The notes below the pieces were generated by a model. It searched no databases, was not told where the DNA came from, and saw only the letters and a program-made list of their open reading frames with translations. A DNA stretch of 64,000 bases from Octopus sinensis (Eukaryota). Every line of letters begins with the position of its first letter. The first letter of the stretch is position 1. This document shows, one piece after another, positions 1 through 59,257 of the stretch. A program made the translations under genes and the position numbers. The stretch covers positions 12,958,001 to 13,022,000 of the forward strand of contig NC_043005.1 of assembly GCF_006345805.1 (NCBI RefSeq), read 5' to 3'.

Positions 1-1304
1 GCCCTCTTGTTGACTGTCAACGTCTAATTGTTGACCAGTGACACTCTCTCTAGGAACGTCGACGGTTCCTTGTTGACTAGTGATGCTCTCTCGTTGACTT
101 TTGACGACACCCTCCTCACTAATGATGCATTCTCGTTGACTATCAGCATCTAATTGTTCATCAGTCACTCGAGGACTGTCGACCATTCCTTGTTGACCTG
201 TGATGATCTCCCATTTACTCTCAATCTCTTCTTCTTGACTAGTAATGCTCTCTCGATGACTTTTGAGGTCACCTTCTTGACTAGGACCTTCGACTAATAT
301 TTGAGGACTAGCGTTGCTCCCTCGTCTTCTGTTGATGAGTCCTTCTTGACTAGGAATGCTCTCTCGCTGACTTTTGACATCACCTTCTTCACTACTGATA
401 AACTTACGTTGACTGTCGACGTCTAATTGTTGACTAGTGATATTCTCCCGTTTACTGTCGATGCGTCCGTCTTGATCCGTGATGCTCCCTCGAGGACTGA
501 CGACGATTCCTTCTTGACTTGTGATGCTCCCTCGTTTACTGCCGATGTGTCCTTCTTGACTTGTAACGCTCTCTCGTTGACTTTTGACACCACCTTCTTC
601 ACTAATAATGCCCTCTCGTTGACTGTTAACGTCTAATTGTTGACCAGGGACACTCTCTCGAGGACTGTCGACGGTTCCTTCTTGACAAGTGATGCTCTCT
701 CGTTGTCTTTTGATGATACCTTCTTCACTAATGATGCATTCTCGTTGACTATCAGCATCTAATTGTTCATCAGTCACTCGAGGACTGTCGACCATTCCTT
801 GTTGACCTGTGATGATCTCCCGTTTACTGTCGATCTCTCCTTCTTGACTAGGAATGCTCTCTCGTTGACTTTTGACGTCACCTTCTTTACTAGGACCTTC
901 GACGAATATTTGAGGACTAGCGTTGCTCCCTCGTCTTCTGTTGATGAGACCTTCTTGACTAGTAATGCTCTCTCGCTGACTTTTGACATCACCTTCTTCA
1001 CTACTGATAAACTCACGTTGACTGTCGACGTCTAATTGTTGACTAGTGATATTCTCTCGTGGACTGTCGACGATCCCCTGTTGACTTGTGATGCCCTCTT
1101 GTTTACTGTCGACCTCTCCTTCTTGACAAGTGATGCTCTCTTGCTGATTGGTGACATCTTGTTCCTTACTAGTGGAGCTTTCTCGGCGACTGTCGACGTC
1201 TACTTGTTGACCAGTGATGCTCTCTCTTTGACTGTCGACGTCTACATGTTCTCTAGTGATGCTCTCTTGTTGAATGTTGGTGTCTCCTTTCTCACTAGTG
1301 ATGG
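1..1304 (-). repeat. Degenerate ~42-bp coding repeats (xRESITSQ-type) with a higher-order duplication of ~600 bp
   Basis: Recurring gactagtgatgctctctcg motif; 1-440 closely matches ~610-1050. Confidence 0.85.
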
Positions 1305-3579
1305 TTTCCTGCCGACTCTCGACGTCTACTTTTTGACTAGCGATGCTCTCTCGTTTGCTGTCGATCTCTGCGTGTTGACTCGGGATGCTTTCTCGCCGAC
1401 TCTCGACGTTTACTTGTTGACTAGCGACGCTCTCTCTTTTGCTGTCGATCTCTGCGTGTTGACTCGGGATGCTTTCTCGCCGACTCTCGACGTCTACTTT
1501 TTGACTAGCGACGCTCTCTCGTTTGCTGTCGATCTCTGCGTGTTGACTCGGGATGCTTTCTCGCCGACTCTCGACGTCTACTTTTTGACTAGCGACGCTC
1601 TCTCGTTTGCTGTCGATCTCTGCGTGTTGACTCGGGATGCTTTCTCGCGGACTCTCGACGTCTACTTTTTGACTAGCGACGCTCTCTCGTTTGCTGTCGA
1701 TCTCTGCGTGTTGACTCGGGATGCTTTCTCGCCGACTCTCGACGTCTACTTTTTGACTAGCGACGCTCTCTCGTTTGCTGTCGATCTCTGCGTGTTGACT
1801 CGGGATGCTTTCTCGCCGACTCTCGACGTCTACTTTTTGACTAGCGACGCTCTCTCGTTTGCTGTCGATCTCTGCGTGTTGACTCGGGATGCTTTCTCTC
1901 GCCGACTCTCGACGTCTACTTTTTGACTAGCGACGCTCTCTCGTTTGCTGTCGATCTCTGCGTGTTGACTCGGGATGCTTTCTCTCGCCGACTCTCGACG
2001 TCTACTTTTTGACTAGCGACGCTCTCTCGTTTGCTGTCGATCTCTGCGTGTTGACTCGGATGCTTTCTCGCCGACTCTCGACGTCTACTTTTTGACTAGC
2101 GACGCTCTCTCGTTGCTGTCGATCTCTGCGTGTTGACTCGGATGCTTTCTCGCCGACTCTCGACGTCTACTTTTTGACTAGCGATGCTCTCTCGTTTGCT
2201 GTCGATCTCTGGTGTTGACTCGGGATGCTTTCTCGCCGACTCTCGACGTCTACCTGTTCACTAGTGATGATCTCAGGCTGACGTTTGACCTGTCTTTCTT
2301 TACTAGTGACGCTGTCTTCTGGAATAATTGGGCCCCTTTTTACATAAATGGGGGTCCGTAATTGATCGATTTGTGGGCATGGGAAGCCAGGTTGTTGACA
2401 TGTTATGTTGCTTTGTTTACAAACGTAGTCCTTTCTTACACAAATTTGGGTCTTTGGTTGACGGACGACGTTCTCTCTTGCGCTTGTGAAGCCACACCGT
2501 TGACAGGTCATTTTGTTTTGTTCACAAACGAAGCCCACGTTTGCACAATTGCAAAACTTTTGTTTACTGCTGACGTTCTCTTGTGGGTATGTGAATCCAC
2601 ATTCTTGACAGGTTATGTCGAATTGTTCACAAACGGGCCCCTTCCCTGTACAAGTGTAGGACGTTTCTCGACAGATGACGTTCTCTTGTGGACATGTGAA
2701 CCCACATCTTTGACAGGTTATGTTACTTTGTCCACAAACGGGATCTCTACAGGGCATCTCTTCTTCACTGATAGCACTGTTCTCTTCACTGATGCGCTTC
2801 AGTCGTGAATAGATGCAGCAGTCGTCTTTACTAGTGGTGGCCTCTTGATCGCAGATTATTCTTCCTTGTGGAAAGATGAGGGCTTCTTCGTCACTATATA
2901 GGCTCGCTGGTTCACTTCCTAGGCTTCCGTATTCACTGGTAGCAGACCCTAGTTGACTACTAGTGAGGCTCCCTGTTGCATCAAATTTCACTCGCGTTTG
3001 TTGATTTTCCCTGCTTTGGCTATTTGTGCTCCCTTGTGGACTGATACGAACCCTTTTTTCATCGGTAAGATAATCTGATTGACTAGTCTTCCTTTTTGTA
3101 CGGGAAGACAAGTTCCTCTTGTCGGTTTCAACAATGGTGTTGTCATCGGAGATGACATCATCTTGTTCACTACTTAAGCTTGCTGGTTCACTTCCTAAGC
3201 TTCCGAATTCACTGGTTATAGTCCCTAGTTGATTACTGAGGCTAGTCGCCTCTGTTGCATCAAGCTTCGTTTGTGATTGGGGATTTTCCGTTTTTGAACT
3301 GATTGCGCTCTCTTTTTCATCGGTAAGATAATCTGGTTGACGAGTCGTCTTTTCTTTGGGGAATCCCTTTTTATCAACATCGCTGCTCTCTTCGCTGATG
3401 ATATCTTCTTGTTCACTACTTGAGCTCGCTCGTTCACTTGCAACGCTTTCAAATTCGCTAGTTGCACTCCCTACTTCATCACTAGAGAGACTTCCAAATT
3501 CACTGCTTACACTCCCTAATTTGGTGTTCTTGTCTCGACCGGTGTGTTTAGATGAACCTTTGGCTTGGTTAGATTTCAT
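1..3579 (-). CDS. Giant exon of a repetitive Ser/Glu/Arg-rich, probably disordered protein (>=1190 aa); runs off the left edge
   Basis: The 470-aa ORF 3579-2167 continues in the same absolute frame from ~1896 to 1 with no stop (I read the triplets). The stop at 2167 arises from local indels in the 84-bp array. The SRRES motif recalls Futsch/MAP1-type repeats, but similarity is low-complexity only. Confidence 0.75.
1305..2255 (-). repeat. ~11 near-identical 84-bp units encoding SIPSQHAEIDSKRESVASQKVDVESRRE
   Basis: Unit tttctcgccgactctcgacgtctactttttgactagcgacgctctctcgtttgctgtcgatctctgcgtgttgactcgggatgc; built from two 42-bp halves. Confidence 0.95.
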
Positions 3580-4227: not shown

Positions 4228-4420
4228 AGCGAGCTGACAGAATCGTTAGCACGCCAGGCAAAATGCCTAGCGGTATTTCGTCCGTCTTTACGTTCTGAGT
4301 TCAAATCCCCGCCGAGGTTGACTTTGCTTTTTATCCTTTCAAATAAGTACCAATTGAAAACTGGGGTTGATGTAATGGCCTTACCCCACCCGTAAACATT
4401 GCCGGTCCTGTGCCAAACTT
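4228..4420 (+). mobile_element. tRNA-derived SINE family A, diverged copy
   Basis: gagctgacagaatcgttagcacg head, gttctgagttcaaatcc B-box, shared central domain. Confidence 0.75.
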
Positions 4421-5097: not shown

Positions 5098-5304
5098 TCC
5101 TTTTCTACTCTAGGTACAAGGCCCGAAATTTTGGGGCAGAGGACCAGTCAATTAGATCGACCCCAGTACGCAACTGGTACCTAATTTATCGATCCCGAAA
5201 GGATGAACAACAAAGTCGACCTCGGCGGAATTTGAACTCAGATCGTAAAGACAGACGAAATACTGCTAGGCATTTCGCCCGGCGGTTCTGCTAGCTCGCC
5301 GCCT
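5098..5304 (-). mobile_element. SINE family A with A1 tail
   Basis: Reverse complement of the A head and body plus tail gggccttgtacctagagtagaaaa. Confidence 0.85.
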
Positions 5305-5732: not shown

Positions 5733-8700
5733 AGTGGGTAGCGAACTTCTTCACTACTTCAGGGAGTGACGACCCTGCCTGACACGAGTTCCGGGCTCAG
5801 CTGGCTCCGGCTGACAGTACCCGGTATGGGCCCCTATCCAGGGTTACGGAAAGGAGACAACCTTCAAAGAAATCCGGAGTGGAGCCCCGAAGGTGGTCTA
5901 GTGTTCGACTCGACACTCTTCCGGCAGCTCCTGCAACCAAGCTGGTGCCAAACGTAATGCAATGCACTCCTTTGGACTACATCAGCAAGGTCGAGAGAGG
6001 AAACCTGACGATTGGGCTACCCAGGACTTTCTTATCTCTAGCCCAGGCATGCGCAAAACTGGAGAGGACACTTCAGTGCTGCTGTAAAAAGCTGCAGAAA
6101 CAACACGGGAGGTAACAGTCACGAGTGATAAGTCCATTCAGATTGGCATAAAATATGGGCGCTACGGGTTACCTCTGACGGTGGGAGGGACCTCCATGTC
6201 CTATTGGTTAGCTACTGCCCACCTCAAGCTGGGCAGCCCCCAGTTAATAAGGTGCTGACCCGCCACAGGCCGCCTGCTCCATTGGGTGCTTGGAGCTAAG
6301 AGTATGACTTGAAAAGCGGCCTGCAACCTCTGCACCAAGCAAACAACTAAAAGTCAAGAAAACACCTGGAATATCTGATGATCTACTCAGGGTTGAAGAC
6401 ACTAGGAAAACGGCCATCATTGACCGTGAACTAAAGAAGCTCAACATAGACATTGCTGGGCTACAGGAGACAAGACTTCCCTCAAACGGCAAACTCAAAG
6501 AGCAGGATTTCACCTTTTGGCAGGGAAGCAATCCAGAAGAATCTCGTCAACATGGCGTCAACATGGCGTTGGCTTTGCAGTGAGAAACTCACTACTCTCC
6601 TCAATAGAACCACCATCAGGAGGCACTGAGCGTATCCTCTCACTGCGCCTCTCGACTTCTTCTGACTCAGTACATCTACTCAGTATCTATGCTCCCACTC
6701 TCTACAGCTCAGAGGAGACCAAGGACCAGTTCTACAAAGATCTCAACTGTGTCATAGAAAATATACCAACGACTGAAAATATCTACCTTCTAGGGGATTT
6801 TAACGCTCGCGTGGGATCTGACCATGATTCGTGGCCCATTTGTGTTGGACACTTTGGTATTGGTAACATGAATGACAATGGTCAGAGACTACTCGAATTC
6901 TGCACATACCACAACCTGTGCATCACAAACACATTCTTTGCCAACAAGCCATCCCACAAGGCATCTTGGAGACATCCAAGATCTCACCACTGGCATCAGC
7001 TGGATCTCATCATTACACGGAGATCCTTTCTGAGTTCTACTCTATTGACCTGCAGTTACCACAGCGCGGATTGTGACACAGACCACTCACTAATTAGAAG
7101 TAGGGGGCCTAAAAAAGTCCATCGCTCCAAGAAAGTGGGCCGACCACGCATTAACACTGCCAGAACCTCGGACCCTACACTGCAAAAATGTTTTGCTGCT
7201 TCTATCAAGGTTGCCCTCAGTAGCTGCCCAACCTCCTCTGCTGAAAGTAGGTGGAACTATATCGGGGAAGCTTTGTATACGACATCAATAGGTACTTTCG
7301 GTATGAGAGAAATGCAAAACCCAGATTGGTTCAATGCTGAGCTCTCAGAGCTGGAACCAGTTATCGAAGCAAAGCGTGCAGCTCTGATGCAATACAAGAG
7401 TGACTCTTCTACAAAGTCACTCGAAGAACTCAGAAAGGCACGAAATAAAACCCAACTGACAGCCAGACGCTGTGCAAATAGGTATTGGCAGGAAATCTGT
7501 CAGAGTATCTAGTCAGCTGCTGACAGGGGCGACACCCGTGGGATGTATGCCGGTTTGAAGAAGGCCCTCGGTCCATCCGCAACCAAGTCAGCCCCTCTGA
7601 AATCAACTACTGGAGATCTCATCAGGGATCAAAGCAAGTAAATGGATAGATGGGTGGAGCACTACCAGGATCTCTACTCACGGGAGACTACAGTGGCTGA
7701 GGTTGCAGTCGAGAGTGTCAAGATCTTGCCAGTCATGTGCGAACTTGACAGTCCGCCATCTATAGCAGAGCTCACCAAAGCTGTTGACTCCCTAGCAAGA
7801 AACAAGGCTCCGGGAAAAGACGGCATCCCCTCAGAGATCATCAAAGCCGGCAAAAACACCATCCTGCTTCGGCACCTTCATGAGCTTCTGTGTCAGTGCT
7901 GGGAAGAGGGTACAGTCCCTCGGGATATGCGGGATGCTAACATCATTACGCTTTACAAAAACAATTACCGTGGAATATCTCTTCTAAGCACTGTTGGAAA
8001 TACCTTTGCCCGCGTTATCCTGGCCAGGCTACAACTATTTGCTTCTCGAATCTATCCGGAATCGCAGTGTGGCTTTAGAAGAAGCACATCAACTATCGAT
8101 ATGATATTCTCCATACGCCAACTTCAGAGAGCAGAAAATGCCATTATATATGGCCTTCATTGATCTAACAAAGGCTTTTGACTCGGTAAGCAGAACAGGC
8201 CTCTTCATCCTGCTCCAAAAAAATCGGATGTCCACCACAGCTGCTGAGGATCATCAAGTCTTTCCATGATGACATGCAAGGCACCATACAGCACAACGGT
8301 TCGACATCAGCCGCCTTCCAAATAAAAAAACGGGGTAAAGCAAGGCTGTGTCCTCGCTCGTACATTGTTTGGCATCTTCTTCTCGCTCTTACTCTCACAT
8401 GGCTTTCAGACATCAGATGATGGAGTGTTTCTGCACAGTAGAAGTGACGGGAAACTGTTCAATCTCTTGCGCCTGCGTGCCAAGACCAAAATCAGAAACG
8501 TCCTGATCAAGGAGATGCTATTTGCTGATGATGCCGCTCTGGTATCACACACAGAAGAAGCCCTCCAAAGGCTCATTAACTGTTTTGAGCAAGCGTGTAA
8601 CGACTTTGGCTTAGATATCAGCCTTAAGAAGACCAACATCATGGGTCAGGCTACATCGGACATCCCAAACATACATATTGGAGACCACAGATTACAAGAG

Positions 8701-9534
8701 GTGGAGAAGTTTACCTATCTGGGTTCTACCGTCACCTACAACCTATCCCTTGACACTGAGCTCAATATACGCATTGGCAAGGCAGCTGCTGTGATGGCCC
8801 AACTCTCCAAACGGGCTTGGGACAACAATAAGCTGACCAAGACCACGAAAATGAAGATCTACCAGGCATGTGTACTTAGCACTCTACTGTATGGAAGTGA
8901 GACTTGGACGCTATACACACGCCAAGAGCGTCGCCTAAACATCTTTCACCTGCGCTGCCTCCGGAAAATCCTCCGTATCAAATGGCAGAATCATATCCCC
9001 AACAAAGATGTCCTCAGGCAAGCAGGAATACCAAGCATGTTTTCACTCCTCACACAAAGACGTATGAGATGACTTGGGCATGTTAGCCGTATGAAAGATG
9101 GCAGAATCCCCAAGGACATACTCTACGGAGAGCTTGCTAGGGGTACTAAGTCTGTGGGTAGACCGTTCTTACGTTACAAGGATGTTTGCAAAAGGGACAT
9201 GAAGGCCTGCAACATCAATATTAGCGGTTGGGAGGCAGTTGCCGGCAACCGTGGAGACTGGCGACGTACCGTAAAAGAGGGAATACAAAGGAGTGACAGA
9301 GAGAGAGAGAGGAGAAATGGAAAGACAAGAAAAGACGTCAACAAGAAACTATGGCATTACAACCAGCCAGGAACAGTCTTCGCTACATTTCCGGTACCTG
9401 CCAGAGGGAGTGTTTGTCCAGGATAGGACTACACAGCCACATCAGGAAATGTATCAGGACATGAAATGTAAAAGCCGAACTAGACTACTTTATGCGCAAC
9501 TACATTGTCTCCCGAGACAAAAGGGATGCCAACA
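5733..9534 (+). mobile_element. Full-length but disrupted RTE-clade LINE (APE endonuclease, RT, C-terminal Cys/His motif)
   Basis: ORF pieces contain GLQETR, LLGDFNARVG, HWHQLDLII (APE), KAPGKDG, NYRGISLL, FADD (RT) and CQRECLSRIGLHSHIRKC. 8-bp TSD acactcgt at 5725-5732 and 9535-9542. Multiple stops and frameshifts. Confidence 0.93.
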
Positions 9535-10375: not shown

Positions 10376-11170
10376 AAAAAACATAGAGCTATAATGCAGT
10401 TCCTGGACCCGTCTTCAAAGTCATCTGGATTTTGTTTTGCTGCGAGGTTACAGGCGACTGTTTTATTTTAACCAGGAATCGATTGGTATAAATAGATGAA
10501 ACTTTGACTTTTCGACACTGTTGTGAGGTTGGTTTTCTAACCAGGAATCGATTGGTGGAAATAGATGAAATTCTGACTTTCCGACACAAGTATGACAGAC
10601 AGGTTAGGTTTTGGCTGTTTGGTGGGATTGAACGAATGAGCAAATGAACTTGTTTTGTGGCACCATTAGTGAGAAATGCGACAAAGCAACGTTCGTTCGT
10701 TTCTCTCATTCAAAAACACGCCAGACTTGGTTTAGTTATTTTATAGGGATTCTTGGGTTAGCCACAAAACTATCAGGGTTTAGGTTACACACATTTTGTA
10801 TTTAACCACTCTGAAAATTTCGTGGAATTAAAATAATGTCTTGCGCACACGTGTTAAGAGGCTGGATATTCGATCAAAATATCTATACAAATATTTCATA
10901 AGGTATTTGCTCATTTCTTCCATTGCAGACAACAAAATTGTGCTTCACCATTTCATCATTCAAGCAGACAAGTTATACCTCCTTCTCTCAGATTGCGACT
11001 AAGCCATTATCCATCTGTATTGGGATTCCTAATCGGAGGGTAAAGAAGTGTACTAGCTTGTTTCTGCATTTCACTAAGTGGTGAGCTGTAGTTTCCGACG
11101 TTTTTTTGTTTTTTTTACGGTTAGATTAGTTCAAAACAGAGCAAGAACCATAGAGAAAAACAAACAAACA

Positions 11171-11587
11171 GGCGTAGGAGTTGCTGTGTGGTAAGTAGCT
11201 TGTTTACCAACCACATGGTTCCGGGTTCAGTCCCACTGCGTGGTACCTTGGGCAAGTGTCTTCTACTATAGCCCCGGGCCGACCAAAGCCTTGTGAGTGG
11301 ATTTGGTAGACGGAAACTGAAAGAAGCCTGTCGTATATATGTATATATATATGTATGTGTGTGTTTGTGTGTCTGTGTTTGTCCCCCTAGCATTGCTTGA
11401 CAATTGATGCTGGTGTGTTTACGTCCCCGTAACTTAGCGGTTCGGCAAAAAGAGACCGATAAAATAAGTACTAGGCTTACAAATAATAATTCCTGGGGTC
11501 GATTTGATCGACTAAAGGCGGTGCTCCAGCATGGCCACAGTCACATGACTGAAACAAGTAAAAGAGTAAAAGAGTAAAAAGAGTAAA
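11171..11587 (+). mobile_element. tRNA-derived SINE family B (internal TA/TG microsatellite, (aaagagt)n tail)
   Basis: tRNA-like head, ccttgggcaagtg CORE-like motif, about 15 related copies in the window. Confidence 0.9.
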
Positions 11588-14469: not shown

Positions 14470-14569
14470 NNNNNNNNNNNNNNNNNNNNNNNNNNNNNNN
14501 NNNNNNNNNNNNNNNNNNNNNNNNNNNNNNNNNNNNNNNNNNNNNNNNNNNNNNNNNNNNNNNNNNNNN
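14470..14569. other. Assembly gap (100 N)
   Basis: Run of N. Confidence 1.
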
Positions 14570-18711: not shown

Positions 18712-19198
18712 CAAGGTCAAAGCCTTCCCACTAGAAATTACCAAAAATATATGAAAAAATGCAAGTAACTGTAGAATACGTGGAGATGGAGAAGAACCAA
18801 TAAATCATATTGACTCTGGCTGCCTAGTCTTGGCTAAGAAGGAGTATATTCACAGACACAACCTATATACAATGGAAGCTGTGCCAACACTATGGAATAA
18901 CAACAGAAAAAACATGGTATGAGCACACGCCAGAAAAGGTCACAGGAAATGAAAAAGCAACCATACTCTGGGATATGCCAATACAGACAAATAGAGAAAT
19001 TAAGGCCAATACGCTGGATATGGTTGTCAGAGATAATCAAGAAAAAAATGCTTTCTAATTCATGTATCAATACCGGCAGATGACAACGTGTCTCTAAAAG
19101 AAATGAAGAAACTTACAAAATGCAAAGACCTGGAAATAGAGGCAACCAGAATGTGGAATCTAAAAACAGAAACAATTCCTATCATAGTAGGCGCATTA
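18712..19198 (+). mobile_element. R4/Dong-type LINE RLE fragment
   Basis: CRIRGDGEEPINHIDSGC..LAKKEYIHRH and KCKDLEIEATRMWNLKTETIPIIVGAL. Confidence 0.85.
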
Positions 19199-19210
19199 TG
19201 TATGATGATA

Positions 19211-19245
<35 letters not shown>

Positions 19246-19401
19246 AATGATGATGATGATGACGATGACGATGATGACGATGACGATGATGACGATGACG
19301 ATGATGATCATGATGATCATGATGATCATGATGATGACGACGATGACGATGACGATGACGATGATGACGATGATGACGATGATGACGATGATGACGATGA
19401 C

Positions 19402-19446
<45 letters not shown>

Positions 19447-19450
19447 AATG

Positions 19451-19497
<47 letters not shown>
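19199..19497. repeat. Compound (GAT)/(GAC)/(CAT)/(AAT) trinucleotide array
   Basis: Direct reading. Confidence 0.95.
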
Positions 19498-19499
<2 letters not shown>

Positions 19500-20915
19500 A
19501 GAAGTAAGAAACCGAGCACTGGACCAGGAAGAAGCATATGAATACCTTGGCATAGATGAAAATAACGGCATAAAACATTCAGCAATGAAAGAGAAGATTA
19601 GAAAAGAAGTACTGCAGGAGAGTACGGTTAGTAGCAAAGACTGAACTCAACGCTGCAAACAAAATAAAAGCCCTTAACACTCTTGCAGTACCAATCGTAG
19701 CTTACAGTTTCAACATAATCAACTGGCAAATGAGCAGACTCCAAGACCAGAAAACTACTAACCATGGCTCGAATGAACCACCCAAAAGCGGATGTGAACA
19801 GGATTTTTTTACCGAGAAGCATGGGAGGAAGAGGACGAACTCAATTAGAATTATCTTACAAAACCACCACTGTAGGATTAAATACATATCTTGAACTGTA
19901 AAAAGATCCTCTAATGAAGCTTGTGTACCAGCATGATAAAGTAAAGAAGCTATACTCGGTATACAAAGGATCTGTACAGTTTAAGAAACAACTGATGACG
20001 GAGGAACCTTTGATGAAGGCGAGTGAGAAAGTAACCCAGTTTGCTAAAAGAGTTAAGAAAGAAACGAAAAAACAAACCCAGAAGAAAAGCAAAGAAGAAT
20101 GGCTAGAAAAACCGATGCATGGCCGATACCCATGTAGAGTGAACAAATCAGACATAGAAAAATGAGAACTCATGTATGGATGAAGAGCTCAGGACTGAAG
20201 GCTGAAACTGAAGGTCTTATCATAGCAGCACAAGATCAAAGCTTGGCAACCAGGGCTTACCACAACAAAATAATGAATGATGGCACTGACCTGAAATGCA
20301 GAATGTGTCATGAGCAGGATGAAAGAGTGGACCACATCTTAACTGGATGCACAGCGCTTGCAAAAGCCAAATATATTCATAGACACGATAGAGTAGCGCA
20401 ATATATCCATTGGAAGATATGTGAACACAACCAGCTTACAACTTCAGAAAGATGGTACCAGCATAAACCTGAAACTGTGACCGGAAAAGATGATATAACA
20501 GTACTCTGAGACATACCAGTCAACACTGATAAAGAAATCAAGGCAAACAGGCCGGACATAATCATCAAAGATTAGAAATGTTTAATGATAAATGTGACAG
20601 TATTATCAGAGTGAAATGCGTCCATTAAAGAAGTTGAGAGTTTATTTAAGTATAAAGACCTAGAAATATGTGGGGAATGAAAAGCAGCACAGCACTAGTG
20701 ATGATTGGAGCATTAGGGCTAATTAAAAAGGGCCTTGATAAGCAGCTCAACAAACTCCCTTGCAGTCTTAACGTGGGAGAACTTCAGAGAATAGTGTTGC
20801 TAGGTTCCGCACACATTTGACGCCGTGAACTCTCCATGAGATGAGGACCTGCTCTGACCCTAGAGTCAAGTGGTAACCCCGGTTCAGCAGAAGACAACGG
20901 ACCATATTTTATTTT
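19498..20915 (+). mobile_element. R4/Dong-type LINE, 5'-truncated (RT C-terminus, CCHC finger, RLE, 3' UTR, TAA tail)
   Basis: AYEYLGI, LKAETEGLIIAAQDQSLAT, CRMCHEQDERVDHILTGC, RHDRVAQYIHW, KANRPDIII. Confidence 0.9.
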
Positions 20916-20967
20916 TAAATAATAATAATAATAACAACAACACAACAACAACAACAACAATAATAAT

Positions 20968-22454
20968 GTAGTCATGCCACATGAGCAGAAGGGTTGCAAG
21001 CGAAAGTGCAGAGGTACCAAGGATCAACTCCTGATAAGCAAAACTGTGCTTAGAGACTGCAAGAGGAGGAAAAGTAACTTAGTCATGTCATGGATCGACT
21101 ATCGTAAGGCGTACGATATGATCCCACATTCTTGGATTATGGAGTGTATGAACTTATTTGGTATTGCATCGAATGTTGAGCAATTGCTTGGAAAAAGTAC
21201 GGCGAATTGGAGGACGGACCTAACAGCATATGGAAGAAGCTTAGGAACGGTAGAAATTAAGAGGGGCATCTTCCAAAAGGACTGCTTGTCCCCACTGATC
21301 GTTGTACTGTGCTTGATACCACTAATATTGATTTTGAGGAAAGCAAAAGCTGGGTATGTATTAAAAAGCCGCCAACAAAAAGTCAACCACTTGTTATTCA
21401 TGGATGACCTCAAATATTATGATAAAGATGAAGTCCAAGTCAGTTCCCTCATTGGCACGGTGTTTACCTTCAGTGCTCATATCAGAATGGAGTTCGGACT
21501 GAGAAAGTGTGGTGTGTTAGTATTGAAGAGAGGCAAAATCAATTGTATGGACAGACTAACGATACCGTCGGGGGAAGTTATGAAGCATATAGAAAAGACG
21601 GGCTATTAGTACTTGGAGATTTTGGAAATGGATAAATTGATGGAGAAAGAAATGACAGAAAAATTTAAGGTGGGGTACTTGCGCAGACTGAGACTGATCC
21701 TTAAGTCGAAATTAAACGGACGGAATAAGATTAAAGCTATCAACACCTGGGCAGTTTCACTCCTTAGATATGAAGCAGGGGTAACCGCATGGACAGTAGA
21801 TGAACCTAACAGCTTAGACAGAAATACAAGAAAATTACTAACTAGATATGGGTCACTTCACCCAAAAAGTGACACAGACAGACTGTATGTACCAAGAAAA
21901 AGAGGACTTATTGGATGCAAACACAGCATTAGAGCAGAAGAAAACAACATAGCATGGGATGTATAAAATGCTACAGAACCGCTATAATTAAAAGTGCGAA
22001 GGTCAGGCTTGTGTAGGATGAAAGATTGCAAAGATAAAGCACTAATACAAGAAATTGAAAAGAATGAAAATGAAAATTGGTGGGTAAAGAAAAGAATGCA
22101 TGGTCAATTTCATAGGGATGTTGAAGATAAGACAGACAAAGAAAAAAGATAAGGAAGAAAAAATGTCGAGAGATATGACAGGTTAGCTTGGGAAGTTAGG
22201 CAGTTGTTGTCGATGGAAAAGGTAGCTGTAGTGCCAATAATTGTCGGAGCCCTGGGAACAGTGAGCAAAAATCTCGAGACACGCGTGGAACAAATAGCGG
22301 CTGCAATAAGAGTGGAGCACTTGCAGAAAACAGCACTGCTTGGAACTGCTCGAATACTCCGGAAGGTGCTCGAAAAATAAGAGGTGTTACCTTAGTTCAC
22401 TGGTAGTGAACAGCTGACACCGTAGTACTTCTCCGGCGTTAGAAGCTGTGCAAA

Positions 22455-23559: not shown

Positions 23560-25260
23560 CGGGCTGTAGCTTAGCCATGATTGATATAAAGTTTCAGACA
23601 ACACAACATGGCTGATGCATTAGCAAGACTGCTGAGTGGTTCTGATTGCGATTTTGACAAAAGTCACAAAAAAAAAAAAAAAGAAAGAAATTATAATCTG
23701 TCCAGATTTGGAATCGGGAATGAAAATCATGATGGAATGGTTTCCACAATGAAGTCATGAAATATGATTCAGTATTACTCTTTTACTCTTTTACCTGTTT
23801 CAGTCATTTGACTGCGGCCATGCTGGAGCACCGTCTTTAGTCGAACAAATCGACCCCAGGACTTATTCTTTGTAAGCCTATTACTTACTCTATCGGTCTC
23901 TTTTGCCGAACTGCTAAGTTATGGGGACGCAAATACACCAGCATCGGTTGTCAAGCGATTTCCAGGGAACAAACACAGACACACAAACACACACACACAT
24001 ATATACTCTCTATCTTTTACTCTTTTACTTGTTTCAGTCATTTAACTGCGGCCATGCTGGAGCACCGCCTTTAATCGAGCAACTCGACCCCGGGACTTAT
24101 TCTTTGTAAGCCCAGTACTTATTCTATCGGTCTCTTTTGCCGAACCGCTAAGTGACGGGGACGTAAACACACACCAGCATCGGTTGTCAAGCAATGCTAG
24201 GGGGACAAACACAGACACACATACATATATATATATACATATATACGACAGGCTTCTTTCAGTTTCCGTCTACCAAATCCACTCACAAGGCTTTGGTCGG
24301 CCCGAGGCTATAGTAGAAGACACTTGCCCAAGATGCCACGCAGTGGGATTGAACCCAGAACCATGTGGTTGGTTAGCAAGCTACTTACCACACAGCCACT
24401 CCTGCGCCTATATACATATACATATATACGACGGGCTTCCTTCAGTTTCCGTCAACCAAATCCACTCACAAGGTTTTGGTTGACCCGAGGCTATAGTAGA
24501 AGACACTTGCCCAAGGTGCCAGGCAGTGGGACTGAACCCGGAACCTTGTGGCTGGTAAGCAAGCTACTTTCCACACAGCCACTCCTGCTCCTATTATTCA
24601 AGTTAAATAATTATTTCCTAATGGTTGGCCAGAAAAGAAATCTAAATATTAAAGACGGGCATTTAATTGAAAATAAGATAAAAAGATGATGTATTTCAAG
24701 TACTGTTGGCATTTTTTAAATGCTGCAGTTCAATGATTATTCCCAGCTAAATTTACTCAATTACTTGAATATCACAGGTACATAGCACAGTAGTAGTTAT
24801 TGATGCTGGCTGAAAATGCAGTTCGATATAGATGTAGTAGTCAAATTAATGACCTCCACGTCAATCAGTTCTTAACAGACTTTGTAAAGAATATAATGAA
24901 AGGCCCAAAAACCTCTGAACGATGGCATTGAATACATTTCGTCGACGTCTGACCAGAGTACAATAAAATACGGTATGCTGTCACTGAATCGTTCTAAAAA
25001 TGTTCTTGTGTTGCATCGAAAACACCAACAATTTCTAATGGAGCATTAAACAAACTCCGTGATTTTTTTTTCTCCATTGAAAGGACTGCGTGAAACAATA
25101 ATATCCAATAAACGAACTCAATTTACGTCATCAAAAATTGAATTAATCAATTTTTACAATGAAATTAACATCTCCTATTTTTCGACCGGTTTCAATCATG
25201 GAAGTAGAGCGCTCTGTTGAAGCATTCAAATAAGGACGTCAAAATAAAGCCATAGAAATC
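23560..25260 (+). mobile_element. Highly decayed Gypsy-type pol remnant (RNase H end, integrase core), interrupted by SINE B copies
   Basis: ~23570-23670 resembles DIKF..QHG(N)ADAL(S)RL; ~25020-25250 resembles LR.FF...GL.ETI.S...TQFTS...ERSVEAFK. Confidence 0.5.
23777..24588 (-). mobile_element. Tandem SINE B cluster (3' part, full copy, 5' part)
   Basis: Three consecutive B segments in one orientation. Confidence 0.9.
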
Positions 25261-25851: not shown

Positions 25852-26122
25852 TCTCTTTCTCTCACTCTCGCGCGCGAAATTACTGGCCCTATTCCAAAAT
25901 TATTATCATTATTATTGTTGTTGTTGTTATTGTTGTTGTTGTTGTTATTGTTGTCGCTGTTTTCTTTCTTCAAATTTTCTTCTATTTCTCGCCGGGTGCT
26001 TTCCGTCAAGTGTTTGGGGTCAATAAATTAACTACCAGTTGCGTACAGGGGTCGATCTAATCGACTAGCCCTCTACCCACAAATTTCAAGCCTTGTGCCT
26101 AGAGTAGAAAGGATTATCATCA

Positions 26123-26183
<61 letters not shown>

Positions 26184-26202
26184 TAGGAGGAGGAGGAGGA
26201 GT

Positions 26203-26620
26203 GGCTGTGTGGAGGCGCAGGAGTGGCTGTGTGGTAAGTAGCTTGCTTACCAGCCACATGGTTCCGGGTTCAGTCCCACTGCGTGGCACCTTGGGCAAGT
26301 GTCCTCTACTATAGCCTCGAGCCGACCAAAGCCTTGTGAGTGGATTTGGTTGACGTAAACTGAAAGAAGCCCGTCGTATATATGTATATATATATGTGTG
26401 TGTGCGTGTGTGTTTGTGTGTCTGTGTTTGTCCCCCTAGCATTGCTTGACAACCGATGCTGGTGTGTTTACGCCCCCCGTCACTTAGCGGTTCGGCAAAA
26501 GAGACCGACATAATAAGTACTGGGCTTACAAAGAATAAGTCCCGGGTTCGAGTTGTTTGACTAAAGGCGGTGCTCCAGCATGGCCGCAGTCAAATGACTG
26601 AAACAAGTAAAAGAGTAAAG
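26203..26620 (+). mobile_element. SINE B with duplicated 5' tip
   Basis: aggagtggctgtgtgg occurs twice at the head. Confidence 0.9.
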
Positions 26621-26973: not shown

Positions 26974-27376
26974 CTAGCAGTATCGCCCGGCGTTGATCGG
27001 GTTTGTAAGGGAAATAACTATATAAGCATTTTTAGAGATGTAAAGTATAATAGCCATCTCAATATGGTTAACCACAAGGGGGGGAGGGGTGTTACTGTAG
27101 CTTTTTACGTTCTGAGATTTAATAATAAATTTTTAGAGAGTTACTTCCCTTATATATGCCAAAAATGCATTAAACATGGAAAAAATTCATGGTAAATTTT
27201 TTTTTAAATCGTAGACTCATCGTAGACGCGCGCTAATACCCAGAAGGGCTCGATATGAATCACGACTATAAGATACCCGGTTTTGGTTAAACTGCACCAC
27301 AAAATGTGGGAGTAGTTAGGAATCTAAATCGTAGGAGACAGACACCACACAACCTCTCTTTTATATATAAAGAAGA
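26974..27376 (-). mobile_element. Non-autonomous Helitron (~400 bp)
   Basis: Minus strand: 5'-TC, subterminal hairpin cccgatcaacgccggg, 3'-CTAG, inserted between A and T, no TSD. Confidence 0.72.
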
Positions 27377-27444
27377 TATGCCATACAGTTTCACCATTTT
27401 GTCCACAAATTCTTCACTTAGCACTTTTCTGAGAATCAGAAAGT

Positions 27445-27643
27445 GATTGTTGTTGTTGTTGTTGTTGATGTAGTTGTTGTTGTGGTTGTTGTTGTGGCTT
27501 TGTTGTTGTGGCTTTGTTGTTGTTGTGGTTGTTGTGGTTGTTGTTATGGTTGTTGTTGTTGTTGTTGAGGCTGTTGTGGTTGTTGTGGTTGTTGCTGTGG
27601 TTGTTCTTGTGGTTGTTGTTGCTGTTGTCATTATCGTCATCGC

Positions 27644-27693
<50 letters not shown>

Positions 27694-27698
27694 CCACC

Positions 27699-27732
<34 letters not shown>

Positions 27733-27741
27733 TAATTATTA

Positions 27742-27817
<76 letters not shown>

Positions 27818-27840
27818 ATTATTATTATTATTATTATTCC
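27445..27840. repeat. Compound (GTT)/(ATC)/(ACC)/(ATT) array
   Basis: Direct reading. Confidence 0.95.
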
Positions 27841-27885
27841 ATTGTCTTTGCACAGCTTCTGACGCTGGAGATGTTTTACGATGGT
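27841..27885 (-). mobile_element. ~45-bp 3' tip of the same Dong subfamily as 20968-22456
   Basis: ctttgcacagcttctgacgctggaga matches the reverse complement of 22428-22456; abuts (ATT)n. Confidence 0.75.
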
Positions 27886-28545
27886 GTGCGCACGATGGGA
27901 GGCAGAGATATCGAGATGAAAGTTTGAGTCTGTGGCTTTACAGCAGTAGATAAAGGTGATATAAGAGGAGTGGTGGGTTGTAACCTAAATTTTACGAGGA
28001 CATGCGATACTCCCACTCACAAAAAAAAAAAAATTTACAAAACTTCTAACATGAAGATTATCTTTTTAAGAAGATTATCTCATTTTTACAATTTCGCAGT
28101 TTCCATTTTCTGACTACCTGAAGAAGGTGTAGTGGCCACTTGTCTTGTTTAATTATATACACCTTGCTGTACACAGCAGAATATCAATTCACGGTTTTGT
28201 ATTATCTTGTTTAAAACGAAGATAAAAAATTTTTAGGTTTTCAATATTTATCGTTTGTTCTCTGGAAAGATATACATACACACAGGCACATTACCTATGT
28301 ATGTATGTATATATATATGTGTGTGTATGTGTGAGCATGTGTGTGTGTGTATATATCTGTATGTGTGTGTGCGTGTGTATAATAACTTTTATCTGATGAT
28401 ATAGAACAAAGCAGTCGCCTTTTCAAGTTCAAAGAACGGGGTTAAGAGGACATCTGCGCTTTCTTTGATGTGACAACCCTGTCATAAATTTTAATGATAG
28501 CAACAATAACAGCAAGGAAAATGGATAACAACAACAACGACAACA

Positions 28546-31126: not shown

Positions 31127-31782
31127 CTTTTCTACTCTTGGCAGAAGGCCCGAAATTTTGGAGGAGGAGGGGGCCAGTCGATTAGATCGACCCCAGTACG
31201 CAACTGGTACTAAATTTTATCGACCCCGAAAGGATGAAAGCAAAGTCGACCTCGGCGGAATTTGTACTCAGAACGCAAAGACAGACGAAATGCCACTAAG
31301 CATTTCGCCCGGCGTGCTAACGTTTCTTATTTCTTTATTGCCCACAAGGGGCTAAACTTAGAGGGGACAAACAAGGACAGACAAAGGGATTAAGTCGATT
31401 ACATCAACCCCAGGCGGCGAACTGGCAGAATCGTTAGCACGCCGGGCGAAATGCATAGCGTATTTCGTCTGCCGTTACGTTCTGAGTTCAAATTCCGCCG
31501 AGGTCGACTTTGCCTTTCATCCTTTCGGGGTCGATAAATTAAGTACCAGTTGCGCACTGGGGTCGATGTAATCGACTTAATATGTTTGTCTGTCCTTGTT
31601 TCTCCTGTCTGTGTTTAGCCCCTTGTGGGTAGTAAAGAAATAGGTACTTAATTTATCGACCCCGAAAGGATGAAAGGCAAAGTCGACCTCGGCGGAATTT
31701 GAACTCAGAACGTAACGCCAGACGAAATACGGCTACGCATTTCGCCCGGTGTGCTAACGTTTCTACCAGCTCGCCGCCTTAA
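31127..31782. mobile_element. Cluster of SINE A segments in alternating orientation
   Basis: A1(-), A2 tail(-), A2(+) at 31415-31643, A(-) at 31644-31782. Confidence 0.9.
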
Positions 31783-39817: not shown

Positions 39818-40490
39818 TATTCTTTTCTATTCTAGGCACAAGGCCTGAAATTTTGGGGGAGGGGCCAGTCGATTAGATAGACGCAGTATGCAAATGGTAC
39901 TTAATTTATCGACTCCGAAAGGATGAAAGGTAAAGTCGACCTCGGCGGAATTTGAACTCAGAACATAGTGGCAGACGAAATACCTATTTCTTTACTACCC
40001 ACAAGGGGCCAAACACAGAGAGGACAAACAAGGACAGACACACAGAGTAAGTTGATTATATCGACCCCAGTGCGTAACTGGTACTTATTTAATCGACCCC
40101 GAAAGGATGAAAGGCAAAGTCGACCTCGGCGGAATTTGAACTCAGAACGTAGTGGCAGACGAAATACCTATTTCTTTACTACCCACAAGGGGTCAAACAC
40201 AGAGAGGAAAAACAAGGACAGACACACAGAGTAAGTCGATTATATCGACCCCAGTGCGTAACTGGTACTTATTTAATCGACCCTGAAAGGATGAAAAGCA
40301 GTCAACCTCGGGGGAATTTGAACTCAGAACGTAACGGCAGACGAAATACGCTACGCATTTCGCCCGGCGTACTAACGCTTCTGCCAGCTCGCCGCCCTCG
40401 GAATTTGAACTCAGAACGTAACGGCAGACGAAATACGGCTACGCATTTCGCCCGGCGTGCTAACGTTTCTGCCAGCTCGCCGCCTTAATA
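39818..40490 (-). mobile_element. SINE A trimer (head-A2 | body-A2 | body-A1) plus an extra head fragment
   Basis: ~184-bp units joined at gacgaaatac|ctatttc (~39984, ~40168). Confidence 0.9.
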
Positions 40491-40507
40491 AACATATATT
40501 ACTACTG

Positions 40508-40872
40508 TACTCCGTCGGTTACGACGGCGAAAGCTCCAGTAGATACTGTCAAAGGAACAGCTTGCTCGTGACATTAACGTGCAAGTGGCTGAGCATTCCA
40601 CAGACACGTGTACCCTTAACATATTTCTCGGGGAGATTCAGCGTGACAGAGTGTAACAAGGTTGGCCCTTTGAAATACAAGTAGAACAGAAACAGGAAAA
40701 AAAGAGAGCGAAAGAGTACAGCAGGGTTCACCACCACCCCTTGCCAGAGCTTCGTGGAGCTTTAAGTGTCTTCGCTCAATAAACATTCACCACACTCGGT
40801 CTGGGAATCGAAACCGCAATCCTATGACTGCGAGTCCGCTGCCCTACCCACTGGGCCATTGTGCCTCCGCAT
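40508..40872 (-). mobile_element. SINE C, tail type C2
   Basis: Reverse complement of 52430-52810. Confidence 0.88.
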
Positions 40873-40902
40873 AACCATATTTGCATGTATGGATATATAT
40901 CA

Positions 40903-41132
40903 GGCGGCGTGCTGGCAGAAACGTTAGTACGCCGGGCGAAATGCGTAGCCGTATTTCGTCTGCCGTTACGTTCTGAGTTCAAATTCCGCCGAGGTCAACT
41001 TTGCCTTTCATCCTTTCGCGGTCGATAAATTAAGTACCAGTTACTCACTGGGGTCGATGTAATCGACTTAATCCGTTTGTTTGTCCTTTTTTGTCCTCTC
41101 TGTGTTTAGCCCCTTGTGGGTAGTAAAGAAAT
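40903..41132 (+). mobile_element. SINE A2
   Basis: Full head and A2 tail. Confidence 0.9.
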
Positions 41133-41984: not shown

Positions 41985-42106
41985 TTTTCTTTCTTCTTTT
42001 CTTTCTCTCTCTTTTCCTTATTCCTTCTCTCTCTCCCTTTGTCTCTCTCTCTCTCTCTCTGACACACACACTGTCTCTCTCTGTGATGCACACATTCTCT
42101 CTCACA

Positions 42107-42137
<31 letters not shown>

Positions 42138-42709
42138 ACACACACACACTCTCTCTCTAACACATACGCGCTCTCTCTCTCTCTCTCTGACACACTGTCT
42201 CTCTAACACACAGACTCTCTCTCTCACTCACCCTATCTGTCTGTAACACCTGTACTTTTTTCTTTTCTTGTTTCTTTCCATCACTTTCTCTTATTTCTTC
42301 TCTCTCTCCCTCTCTGACACGCATACTCTCTCTCTCTCTCTCTCTCTCACGCTCACATACACACACTCTCTTTCTCTCTCGCTCTCACTTACACACTCTC
42401 TCTCACTCTGTCTGTAACACACGTACTTTTTTCTTTTCTTGCTTTCTTTCCCTCTCTTTCTCTTATTCCTTCTCACTCTCTCTGACACATACTCTCTCTA
42501 TCTCTCTGAACCCCCCTCTCTCTCTCTGACACACACACTGTCTCTCTAACACACAGACTCTCTCTCTCACTCACTCTCTTTCTGTGATATACATACTCTG
42601 TCTGTCTCTCTCTCTCTCTGATACACATACTCTCTCTCTCTTAATCACACATACACACACACACTCTTTCTCTGACACATACACACACACTCTCTTTCTT
42701 TGATATACA

Positions 42710-42743
<34 letters not shown>

Positions 42744-42890
42744 GACACATACACACACACTCTCTCTCTCTCACTCACTCTCTTTCTGTGATATACATAC
42801 TCTGTCTGTCTCTCTCTCTCTCTCACATACACTCTTTCTTACTCACATACACTCTATCTGTCCGTCTCTCTCTCTCTCTCTCTGAACAAT
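41985..42890. repeat. Compound (CT)/(CA) low-complexity array with higher-order blocks
   Basis: ctgtctgtaacac..tacttttttcttttctt recurs. Confidence 0.9.
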
Positions 42891-43372
42891 GTGAGACTAA
42901 TCCTGGTTTTTATATTATTTTATTTTTAGTAGGTTTTCCGAATTGCAATTATATTTCGTTCTCAAAGAAGTTAACTTCTCTCCATTCGTGAGTAAATAAC
43001 TGTTTCCCAATTTAGACACAAGACCAGTAATTTTGAACGGTATTGTCAATTAGAAAAACCCCAGTTCTTGACTGGTATCTTATTTCATCGACTCTGAAAG
43101 ATTAAAAGGCGAACTTGTCCTCGACGGAGTTCGAACTCACAAAGTAAAACAACAGTAAGAAATACTGCAACGCATCTGTTCCGACGCTCTATCGTTTCTG
43201 CCATCTCACTGCCTTTCGAGAATTGATTGATAAAGAACCTATCATGTTATTCTATCAATTAAATAGATGATACATATTAGATTCAAATTTTGGCACAAGA
43301 CCAGCGGGTTCGGGGTGGGGATGGAGGTAGGAGCAAATCGATTAGATCGATCCCGGTGCTCAACTGGTATTT

Positions 43373-43595
43373 AGGATCCTTTACCTTTTGACCTACAGGT
43401 TTAAAAAATTATTTTTTTGTAACTAAACACTTCCAAACTTCGGACTCTGGTAGAATGTGTCATAGAAAACATCTTTTACTCTTAGCATTTTTGAGAAAAA
43501 CTTACATTTACGAAGTTATTTCACGTTAAAGTTCTCGTATTTCGGTAATTTCAACCAATCACTGACGTGTCCGAGGGAAATTTTGTCCTGATCCC
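43373..43595. mobile_element. Short MITE related to the gggatc MITE, opposite orientation
   Basis: ggatcc...gatccc ends; internal gtaactaaacact..ggtagaatgtgt and caaccaatcactgacgt are reverse complements of motifs in the neighbouring MITE. Confidence 0.6.
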
Positions 43596-43606
43596 ATAAA
43601 TTAATT

Positions 43607-44027
43607 GGGATCTTTTCGGTTTGAACGGCAGTTTTTTCTAGCGGTGTCATATGCAATTGTCACCCATAATTATGACCCTAGAATCGATCTATTGCATTTC
43701 AATCTGTTTTAGGGTTAGAGTTAGGGGTGGGGGGAAGGGTATCTTTTTTTCTTCACAAATGTAAATAAACCCAATCTGTTTCTTAAACGAGGGACATATT
43801 CATACGGCACAGGATGTTTTTTTTACCTCAATGGACGCCATTGATTGGTTGAAATTGCAGTAATTGAAGAAAAAAAACAACAAATATCTTACAAACTGTA
43901 GAATTTTCTCAATAAAGCCAAGAGAAAAAGATGTTTTATAAACACATTCTACCAGTATACGAAGTTTTAAATTTTTTAGTTACCTAGAAATTATGTTAAA
44001 AATTGCCAGTCAAACCGAAAAGATCCC
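43607..44027. mobile_element. Second copy of the gggatc-TIR MITE
   Basis: High similarity to 37140-37562. Confidence 0.88.
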
Positions 44028-44444
44028 TTTTTTTAATGCCTATTACGATACCATATTTAAAAATTTTTTTTAATACATGTTTTATCTATATCCCACTATT
44101 ATTTTTATATATGTTCTATTATTAGTATGTTTATGTATCTATATACCTTTATGTCCATGTATATTTTTAGTATTCATATATTTTCATATTTTTATTTATT
44201 TTTTATATCTCTGATGTATCGATATATGTTACATTTTGGACAATCCTGATATCTCTACCTCCATAGGCATGCACACATGTATATCATGACTCATACCCTG
44301 TTTACTTGCCTGACTTTTTTTTTTACATAATTCTATGTACTGTACATGCACCTTTGATGAGTTGTAGTGCACCATACGTCCGCGATGTATGGTAAATACC
44401 GCCAAATTGTATTCGTAAATATAGATTACTTTTTTTACTGTACT

Positions 44445-48396: not shown

Positions 48397-48443
<47 letters not shown>

Positions 48444-57184: not shown

Positions 57185-58660
<1,476 letters not shown>

Positions 58661-59226: not shown

Positions 59227-59257
<31 letters not shown>

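What the first reader, a model, noticed from the sequence alone, without database searches (positions are those of the whole stretch)
1..3579. Hidden >=1190-aa repeat protein with a dense array of PKA-type sites, missed by the ORF track
Seen: the minus-strand frame is open from ~1896 to base 1 and in phase with the 470-aa ORF. It encodes 14-aa units placing RRES or KRES every 14 residues (~22 in the perfect array) plus degenerate QRES/KRGS/RRGS units. Known: (R/K)-R-x-S is the PKA consensus, and Drosophila Futsch carries SRRES-containing repeats. Inference: a lineage-specific disordered protein whose charge is tuned by multisite phosphorylation (cytoskeletal, neuronal or sperm).
Basis: partly seen in the sequence, partly recalled or inferred. 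Interest (0 to 1): 0.7.

Follow-up and report, generated by a model that had tools for sequence, protein, structure and literature searches.

The report
Orphan repeat-protein gene, frame broken in assembly
The minus strand at the left edge of the window carries a long reading frame for a serine-rich protein built from tandem repeats, with no credible relative anywhere; three stop codons in the newest repeats break it as assembled, and the proposed kinase-site function is untested and not well supported by the older repeats.

Summary
From the ATG at 3579 to base 1, one minus-strand frame has 3 stops in 1193 codons; the other five frames have 28-110. It is not one open frame. It reads as 470 codons, then an 81-codon zone with three TAGs, then 642 open codons that run off the window.

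The stops come from six 1-2-nt indels (net 0) in five near-identical 84-nt repeat units. That pattern suggests assembly error or very recent damage.

The frame looks maintained:
- The non-repeat part has 0 stops against 21±4 in shuffles.
- The old, diverged 14-aa units have 0 stops against 8-11 expected.
- Indels in the old units are all multiples of three.

Amino-acid constraint is weak (dN/dS 0.5-1.0). I found no credible homologue, Pfam domain, PDB relative or confident fold.

The RRES/KRES "PKA array" is one 28-aa unit amplified about 12 times. As assembled, 16 sites are in frame, not about 22. The older consensus is SQEGDVDSQRESIT: monobasic, with the Ser often lost, and with SQ and acidic-kinase motifs equally dense.

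Best reading: a lineage-restricted gene, intronless within the window, for a probably disordered repeat protein. Phospho-regulation is plausible but unproven. Tissue and taxon were not testable.

The parts
3577..3579 (-). ATG start codon of the frame. An in-frame TAG lies 9 nt upstream (3588-3586) and there is an A at -3.
2167..3579 (-). 470-codon ORF as assembled, ending at TAG 2169-2167. No signal peptide or hydrophobic segment.
   Evidence: 0 stops against 21.3±4.2 in shuffles for its 420 non-array codons
2794..3519 (-). Three diverged acidic, Ser-rich repeats of about 90 aa. They start at 3519, 3228 and 2952, with shared motifs LGxxTSEFGSLGSEPASLSSEQ and DYLTDEK.
   Evidence: 40-52% aa identity, dN/dS 0.54-0.83
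2362..2739 (-). Cysteine-rich zone of 18 heptads ([VTI]C-x5, e.g. VCGQSNI/TCQRCGF/TCPQENV), organised in repeats of about 35 aa.
   Evidence: This is the only region with any database match, a (TCSESGV)n repeat in Pecten maximus XP_033725044.1.
1..2304 (-). Tandem array of 42-nt (14-aa) units, about 54 in all, running off the left end of the window. Old-unit consensus is SQEGDVDSQRESIT.
1330..2253 (-). Eleven near-identical 84-nt (28-aa) units, VDVESRRESIPSQHAEIDSKRESVASQK, the recently amplified core. A twelfth, half-diverged unit lies at 1329-1246.
   Evidence: (97% matches)
1834..2253 (-). Units 0-4, which carry six frame-shifting indels. Sequence contexts: delG 2217-2207; CCC>CC 2145-2137 and 2063-2055; AAA>AA 2118-2109; +GA 1989-1977 and 1903-1891. 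Net change is 0 nt, and there is only one substitution in these units.
1927..2169 (-). Zone of 81 codons that holds the three in-frame TAG stops (2169-2167, 2004-2002, 1929-1927).
1..1926 (-). 642-codon open tail, in phase with the ATG and truncated by the window edge.
1..414 (-). Copy B of a 609-nt higher-order duplication. Copy A is at 610-1023. The copies are 94% identical with no indels.
   Evidence: dN/dS 1.0
610..1023 (-). Copy A of the 609-nt higher-order duplication.

Best explanation
This is a taxonomically restricted protein-coding gene, or one that was coding until very recently. It has no intron within the window.

The product is non-globular, rich in Ser/Glu/Gln/Arg, and built from three repeat families:
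- three acidic Ser-rich repeats of about 90 aa;
- 18 cysteine heptads;
- about 54 or more 14-aa units, which also form 28-aa and 203-aa higher-order repeats.

The array evolves by amplification of whole units. A young, near-identical core of 84-nt units sits between older, degenerate units.

Shown:
- Selection has kept the frame free of stops and of non-3n indels in the old units and in the non-repeat part.
- Constraint on amino-acid identity is weak.

Inferred:
- The three stops come from six 1-2-nt indels confined to five young units. I lean (about 55:45) to assembly or consensus errors in a near-perfect tandem array rather than real lesions. On that reading the true product is a single polypeptide of at least 1190 aa that continues beyond the window.
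- It most likely works as an intracellular, intrinsically disordered, multiply phosphorylatable scaffold or spacer. No particular kinase is indicated.
For: - The frame has 3 stops in 1193 codons, against 28-110 in the other five frames.
- The non-array ORF part has 0 stops against 21.3±4.2 in 5000 shuffles.
- The diverged units have 0 stops against 7.7-10.8 expected, and CGA>CAA occurs 3-4 times while the symmetric CGA>TGA occurs 0 times.
- The only indels in the old array are 27 nt and 6 nt.
- The antisense frame that is open in the perfect units has 7 stops in the diverged part. It acts as an internal control.
- All six frameshifts lie in 420 nt that differ from sister units by a single substitution. 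That is about 14 per kb, against about 1.3 per kb in a decayed LINE nearby. Five of the six are in CCC, AAA or GAGA contexts. The assembly is scaffolded, with a 100-N gap.
- There is no AATAAA or ATTAAA on this strand after the first stop.
- The product has no signal peptide and no hydrophobic stretch, and the tail is 17% Ser with net charge -45. pLDDT is 35-38.
Against: - No homologue exists in 1.84 billion or 5.8 billion protein sets, in metagenome or viral contigs, in Pfam or in PDB. There is therefore no cross-species test of frame conservation.
- dN/dS is 1.0 between the 609-nt copies and 0.54-0.83 among the N-terminal repeats. Differences are spread evenly over the three codon positions, 100/67/87.
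- Identical indels in adjacent units (CCC>CC in units 1 and 2, +GA in units 3 and 4) could reflect real variants spread by unit duplication. Units 5-10 have the same sequence contexts and are clean.
- The conservative version of the stop test gives only P about 0.02.
- No expression data could be consulted.
Confidence: 0.55

Rival explanations
1. The frameshifts are real. Either the gene now makes only the 470-aa protein and the array has just become 3' UTR, or the whole gene is a very young pseudogene or a null allele.
For: The sequence as assembled has three TAGs. Identical indels in neighbouring units look like real variants copied by unit duplication, and seven other units with the same contexts are intact. 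Weak amino-acid constraint fits a dispensable gene.
Against: Four to six indels against one substitution in 420 nt is far from a normal mutation spectrum. No disabling change exists in the other roughly 3150 nt. The 642-codon tail has not begun to decay. No poly(A) signal follows the first stop.
Confidence: 0.25
2. The array is a non-coding 42/84-nt minisatellite that happens to be open in one frame, lying beside an untranslated or chance ORF. No protein is made from it.
For: dN/dS is about 1 and differences are flat across codon positions. The antisense frame is also open over the perfect units. There is no homologue, domain or fold. T-poor composition (11-20% T) lowers the chance of stops.
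Against: Shuffles and simulations that keep composition still expect 21 and 8-11 stops where none occur. The other frames do accumulate stops. Old-unit indels are all multiples of three. The array is in phase with a 420-codon upstream ORF that starts at an ATG.
Confidence: 0.1
3. The zone with the stops is removed as an intron, so the mature mRNA is in frame.
For: 110 GT..AG removals would keep the frame and remove every stop. The net indel sum is 0.
Against: The best donors match only 6 of 9 consensus positions. No acceptor has a pyrimidine tract (at most 7 of 14), because the strand is purine-rich. The candidates exist only because the units repeat.
Confidence: 0.05
4. The ORF belongs to a transposable element or an endogenous viral element with internal tandem repeats.
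For: The surroundings are dense with LINE and SINE copies.
Against: There is no second copy in the window and no relative in any protein or contig collection, whereas the neighbouring LINE finds 2197. There is no transposase, RT or capsid domain, and no terminal repeats bracket the ORF.
Confidence: 0.03

Closest known systems
Involucrin and trichohyalin-type genes: single-exon structural proteins built from short Gln/Glu-rich tandem repeats (from my own knowledge)
   Same: The repeat array lies in one exon. A young, near-identical block of units sits next to older, degenerate units. Evolution is by unit amplification with weak amino-acid constraint. The units are rich in Q, E and R.
   Different: No sequence similarity was found. 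There is no S100/EF-hand head. The unit is 14/28 aa and Ser-rich. The source is an invertebrate-like genome. No transglutaminase-substrate role is implied.
Neurofilament-H KSP tail and the MAP1B/Futsch repeat regions
   Same: The concept matches: a long, disordered repeat region that presents one phospho-acceptor motif per unit.
   Different: Those motifs are proline-directed (KSP), and the proteins carry conserved rod or MAP1 domains. No such domain or similarity was found here. The Futsch SRRES statement could not be verified.
CFTR R domain: a disordered segment with many dibasic PKA sites (from my own knowledge)
   Same: R-R/K-x-S sites sit in an unstructured, charged segment where charge could be tuned by multisite phosphorylation.
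   Different: The R domain is not a tandem repeat and is part of an ABC transporter. Here the dibasic sites come from one amplified unit and are absent from the older units.
Nopp140 (NOLC1) and treacle: acidic serine clusters phosphorylated by CK2 (from my own knowledge)
   Same: The N-terminal repeats carry acidic Ser clusters such as SSSSEQEDIISEESSD, interspersed with basic K/R patches. There is no signal peptide.
   Different: There is no LisH or SRP40 domain and no similarity in any search.
Pecten maximus 'papilin-like' XP_033725044.1, C-terminal (TCSESGV)n heptads
   Same: A cysteine every seventh residue over more than 120 aa. Identity is 28-29% over 143 aa, E 1e-23.
   Different: The match is confined to the periodic Cys zone, and the rest of both proteins is unrelated. 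It is best read as similar low-complexity periodicity, not orthology.

Membership tests
Functional protein-coding gene | Uninterrupted reading frame from start to stop | tested here: not met
   Three in-frame TAGs at 2169, 2004 and 1929, caused by six indels. The 3' end lies outside the window. The failure may be an assembly artefact.
Functional protein-coding gene | Frame kept free of stops and frameshifts beyond chance | tested here: met
   0 stops against 21.3±4.2 expected in the non-array part. 0 against 7.7-10.8 in the old units. Only 3n indels in the old units.
Functional protein-coding gene | Purifying selection on amino acids (dN/dS well below 1) | tested here: inconclusive
   dN/dS is 1.0 between the 609-nt copies (25 differences) and 0.54-0.83 among the N-terminal repeats. 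These are paralogous comparisons only.
Functional protein-coding gene | Transcription and translation | not testable with these tools
   No expression data were available. No related protein exists in collections that include assemblies of public sequencing runs.
PKA substrate sites (R-R/K-x-S/T-hydrophobic) | Dibasic residues at -3/-2, Ser at 0, hydrophobic residue at +1 | tested here: met
   RRESI and KRESV occur 16 times in frame as assembled, 13 of them in the near-perfect part of the open tail.
PKA substrate sites (R-R/K-x-S/T-hydrophobic) | Motif conserved across the older, independently evolving units | tested here: not met
   Only 4 [RK]R.S in the 432-aa degenerate tail. The consensus is QRES. 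Ser12 is kept in about 17 of 28 old units.
PKA substrate sites (R-R/K-x-S/T-hydrophobic) | Actual phosphorylation by PKA | not testable with these tools
   This needs a kinase assay or phosphoproteomics.
MAP1B/Futsch family | MAP1 N-terminal and light-chain domains, or sequence similarity to them | tested here: not met
   No Pfam family matched. No MAP-like hit appeared in the exhaustive search.
SQ/TQ cluster domain (ATM/ATR-type target region) | At least 3 SQ/TQ within 100 residues | tested here: met
   37 [ST]Q in the 642-aa tail, about one per unit. This is a motif count only and says nothing about function.
Non-coding minisatellite | Diverged units accumulate stops and non-3n indels in every frame | tested here: not met
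   The coding-phase frame has no stops in 1-1926. The other frames, including the antisense frame that is open in the perfect units, do accumulate them.
Transposable element or viral ORF | Multiple copies, TE or viral protein domains, terminal repeats | tested here: not met

The most novel reading that the evidence does not exclude
A gene restricted to one invertebrate lineage grew out of a 42-nt minisatellite and is translated into a disordered protein of at least 1190 aa. Its recently amplified core creates about 22 new dibasic kinase sites on a background of about 40 SQ and acidic-kinase sites. That would be a phospho-switch array caught in the act of expanding.
Probability: 0.12. Interest if true: 0.5.

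Novelty: new member of a known kind. Interest (0 to 1): 0.3.

Why it matters
If the frame is intact in the real genome and is expressed, this is an unannotated orphan gene. It would give a clean example of how a tandem-repeat protein grows, with old degenerate units flanking a freshly amplified core. It would also show how such growth can multiply a kinase motif within a short evolutionary time.

There is a practical point too. Near-perfect coding repeats are places where assemblies introduce frameshifts and gene predictors then drop the gene. Otherwise it is an ordinary low-complexity orphan ORF with no functional evidence.

Tried and rejected
- Homology. I searched the 470-aa ORF and the 632-aa array against 5.8 billion proteins. 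I ran the ORF exhaustively against 1.84 billion representatives. I also tried an exact look-up, metagenome and viral scans by protein and by DNA, Pfam and NCBIfam and PDB. Nothing credible came back. The NCBIfam hits (HmpF, SMC, Rad50, ClfA) are far below their cut-offs and are compositional. The Pecten hit is periodic-cysteine similarity only.
- Species identification. The neighbouring LINE reverse transcriptase gave about 70%-identical relatives from sea urchin, amphioxus, gastropods, coral and shark, so no species was identified. Rfam and tRNA scans were empty.
- An intron across the shifted zone. Only weak signals exist, so I rejected it.
- The LINE as an indel-free control. My first reading, that the LINE stays in a single frame, was wrong. 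tblastn shows at least 4 frame changes. I kept the argument only as a density and indel-to-substitution comparison.
- Structure. Both AlphaFold2 runs were low-confidence, so I ran no fold search.
- Literature. Strings of the repeat peptides gave no hits, and no paper pairs Futsch with SRRES.
- A paralogue elsewhere in the window: none found.
Full report
**Setting**

The window is eukaryotic. It is full of microsatellites and has at least 16 copies of a SINE-like core. It also holds decayed LINE endonuclease/reverse-transcriptase ORFs and one 100-N scaffold gap. It has no tRNA or Rfam hits. The LINE's best relatives are only about 70% identical and come from assorted marine animals.

**The observation**

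- Translating the minus strand from the ATG at 3579 to base 1 gives 1193 codons with exactly three stops, all TAG, at 2169, 2004 and 1929.
- The other two minus frames have 42 and 110 stops over the same stretch. The plus frames have 28, 75 and 110.
- The sequence as assembled therefore reads as a 470-codon ORF, then an 81-codon zone with three stops, then 642 open codons that leave the window. The ORF lister misses that tail because it runs off the end.
- The two open parts are in the same phase. "At least 1190 aa" holds only if the three stops are ignored.

**Anatomy of the conceptual protein**

- Residues 21-262: three diverged acidic, Ser-rich repeats of about 90 aa.
- Residues 281-406: 18 cysteine heptads.
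- From residue 426 onwards: 14-aa units.
- The array has a young core of eleven near-identical 84-nt (28-aa) units, VDVESRRESIPSQHAEIDSKRESVASQK, plus a half-diverged twelfth. Degenerate units flank the core on both sides.
- The old-unit consensus is SQEGDVDSQRESIT, and old units are about 80% identical to it.
- The distal part contains a 609-nt higher-order duplication, 94% identical with no indels.

**Where the stops come from**

- I aligned each 84-nt unit to the consensus. This shows six small indels, all in units 0-4 (2253-1834): loss of a G, loss of one C from CCC (twice, in adjacent units), loss of one A from AAA, and gain of GA in a GAGA context (twice, in adjacent units).
- They sum to -3 and then +3, so the frame returns twice and the distal array stays in phase.
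- These five units differ from their sister units by one substitution only.
- Six frameshifts in 420 nt is about 14 per kb. A clearly decayed LINE nearby has at least 4 frame changes in about 3.1 kb.
- No other disabling change exists in the remaining roughly 3150 nt of the frame.
- Clustering, an extreme indel-to-substitution ratio and low-complexity contexts all fit consensus errors in a near-perfect tandem array. They could instead mean very recent lesions.
- Against the artefact reading, the paired identical indels and the seven clean units with identical contexts are what real variants copied by unit duplication would look like.
- I lean 55:45 to artefact and cannot decide without reads.
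- A splice that removes the zone is formally possible (110 frame-preserving GT..AG pairs), but the signals are poor.

**Is it coding?**

For:
- The 420 non-array codons have no stop, against 21.3±4.2 in 5000 dinucleotide-preserving shuffles, minimum 8.
- Random substitution at the observed level in the diverged units would give 7.7-10.8 stops. None is seen. P is about 6e-5 if all differences count and about 0.02 if only distinct variants count.
- CGA>CAA occurs 3-4 times, but the mirror CpG change CGA>TGA never does.
- The only old-unit indels are 27 nt and 6 nt.
- The antisense frame that is open in the perfect units collects 7 stops in the diverged part.

Against, or neutral:
- dN/dS is 1.0 between the two 609-nt copies and 0.54-0.83 among the N-terminal repeats.
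- Differences are spread evenly over codon positions.
- No homologue exists to test frame conservation across species.

The best fit is a fast-evolving, weakly constrained coding sequence whose frame, rather than its residues, is under selection. That is common for disordered repeat proteins and young genes.

**What the protein would be**

- It has no signal peptide or hydrophobic segment. The maximum 19-residue hydropathy is 0.35.
- The tail is 17% Ser, 13% Glu, 11% Gln and 9% Arg, with net charge -45.
- There is no Pfam, PDB or confident AlphaFold2 structure; pLDDT is 35.5 and 38.3, from single-sequence runs.
- This points to an intracellular, probably disordered protein.

**The PKA reading**

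- R-R-E-S-I and K-R-E-S-V do match the textbook R-R/K-x-S-hydrophobic consensus. That consensus is from my own knowledge.
- They occur 16 times in frame as assembled, or about 22 if the indels are ignored.
- All but a few of them are copies of one recently amplified 28-aa unit.
- The 432-aa older part has only 4 [RK]R.S. Its consensus is monobasic QRES, and the acceptor Ser is kept in roughly 17 of 28 old units.
- [ST]Q (37) and S-x-x-[ED] (38) motifs are at least as dense.
- Multisite phosphorylation is plausible for such a sequence. A selected PKA array is not supported, and no kinase can be singled out.
- Nothing bears on the tissue of expression.

**Comparison with known systems**

- In the way it evolves it resembles single-exon Q/E-rich repeat genes such as involucrin and trichohyalin.
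- In concept it resembles phospho-repeat tails such as neurofilament-H KSP, MAP1B/Futsch, the CFTR R domain and Nopp140.
- It is not a member of any of these. No defining domain or similarity was found.
- The only database match is a scallop "papilin-like" protein, and it is confined to the periodic-cysteine zone.

**Verdict**

This is a real and non-random long reading frame for an orphan repeat protein, broken in the assembly by six clustered indels. Interest is modest unless reads and RNA show that it is intact and expressed.

Noticed in passing
window 6368-9452 (+): A decayed LINE with an Exo_endo_phos_2 endonuclease and RVT_1 reverse transcriptase. It has several in-frame stops and at least 4 frame changes. 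Its best relatives are about 65-72% identical and come from sea urchin, amphioxus, gastropods and coral.
   Followed up: partly
window 20935-21963 (+) and 51673-52131 (-): Further retroelement fragments. The first has a clear RVT_1 domain (E 1e-13). The second has no Pfam hit.
   Followed up: partly
window 4252-4309 and 5227-5284; other copies near 23159, 25684, 31481-31694, 39947-40972, 45355, 60141, 62191-63093: A SINE-like element with core GGAATTTGAACTCAGA, present at least 16 times in the window. Two copies in inverted orientation (90% complementary, 917 nt apart) lie just upstream of the ORF.
   Followed up: partly
window 11124-11540, 23812-24686, 26089-26589, 44326-44822, 54030-54949: A second multi-copy element, giving recurring pseudo-ORFs such as LRPCWSTAF...VSFAEPLSDG. 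It always abuts CA/TA-type microsatellites.
   Followed up: no
window 14470-14569: A run of exactly 100 N, which is a scaffold gap. The assembly is therefore scaffolded and not gap-free, which bears on the question of indel artefacts.
   Followed up: yes
window 42001-44000 and 48001-50000: Two blocks with very strong negative GC skew (-0.38 and -0.44). The second gives a Ser/Pro/Leu-rich low-complexity pseudo-ORF at 49023-49499.
   Followed up: no
window 19060-19644, 27287-27953, 57013-57729, 58174-59441: Long trinucleotide and purine-rich microsatellites. They produce poly-Ile, poly-Asp, poly-Met and KE/R-rich pseudo-ORFs of 130-240 codons on both strands.
   Followed up: no
window 2362-2739 (-): The cysteine-rich zone is strictly heptad-periodic, and the 14-aa units place I/V every seventh residue. 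The whole protein may therefore descend from a 7-residue (21-nt) period.
   Followed up: no
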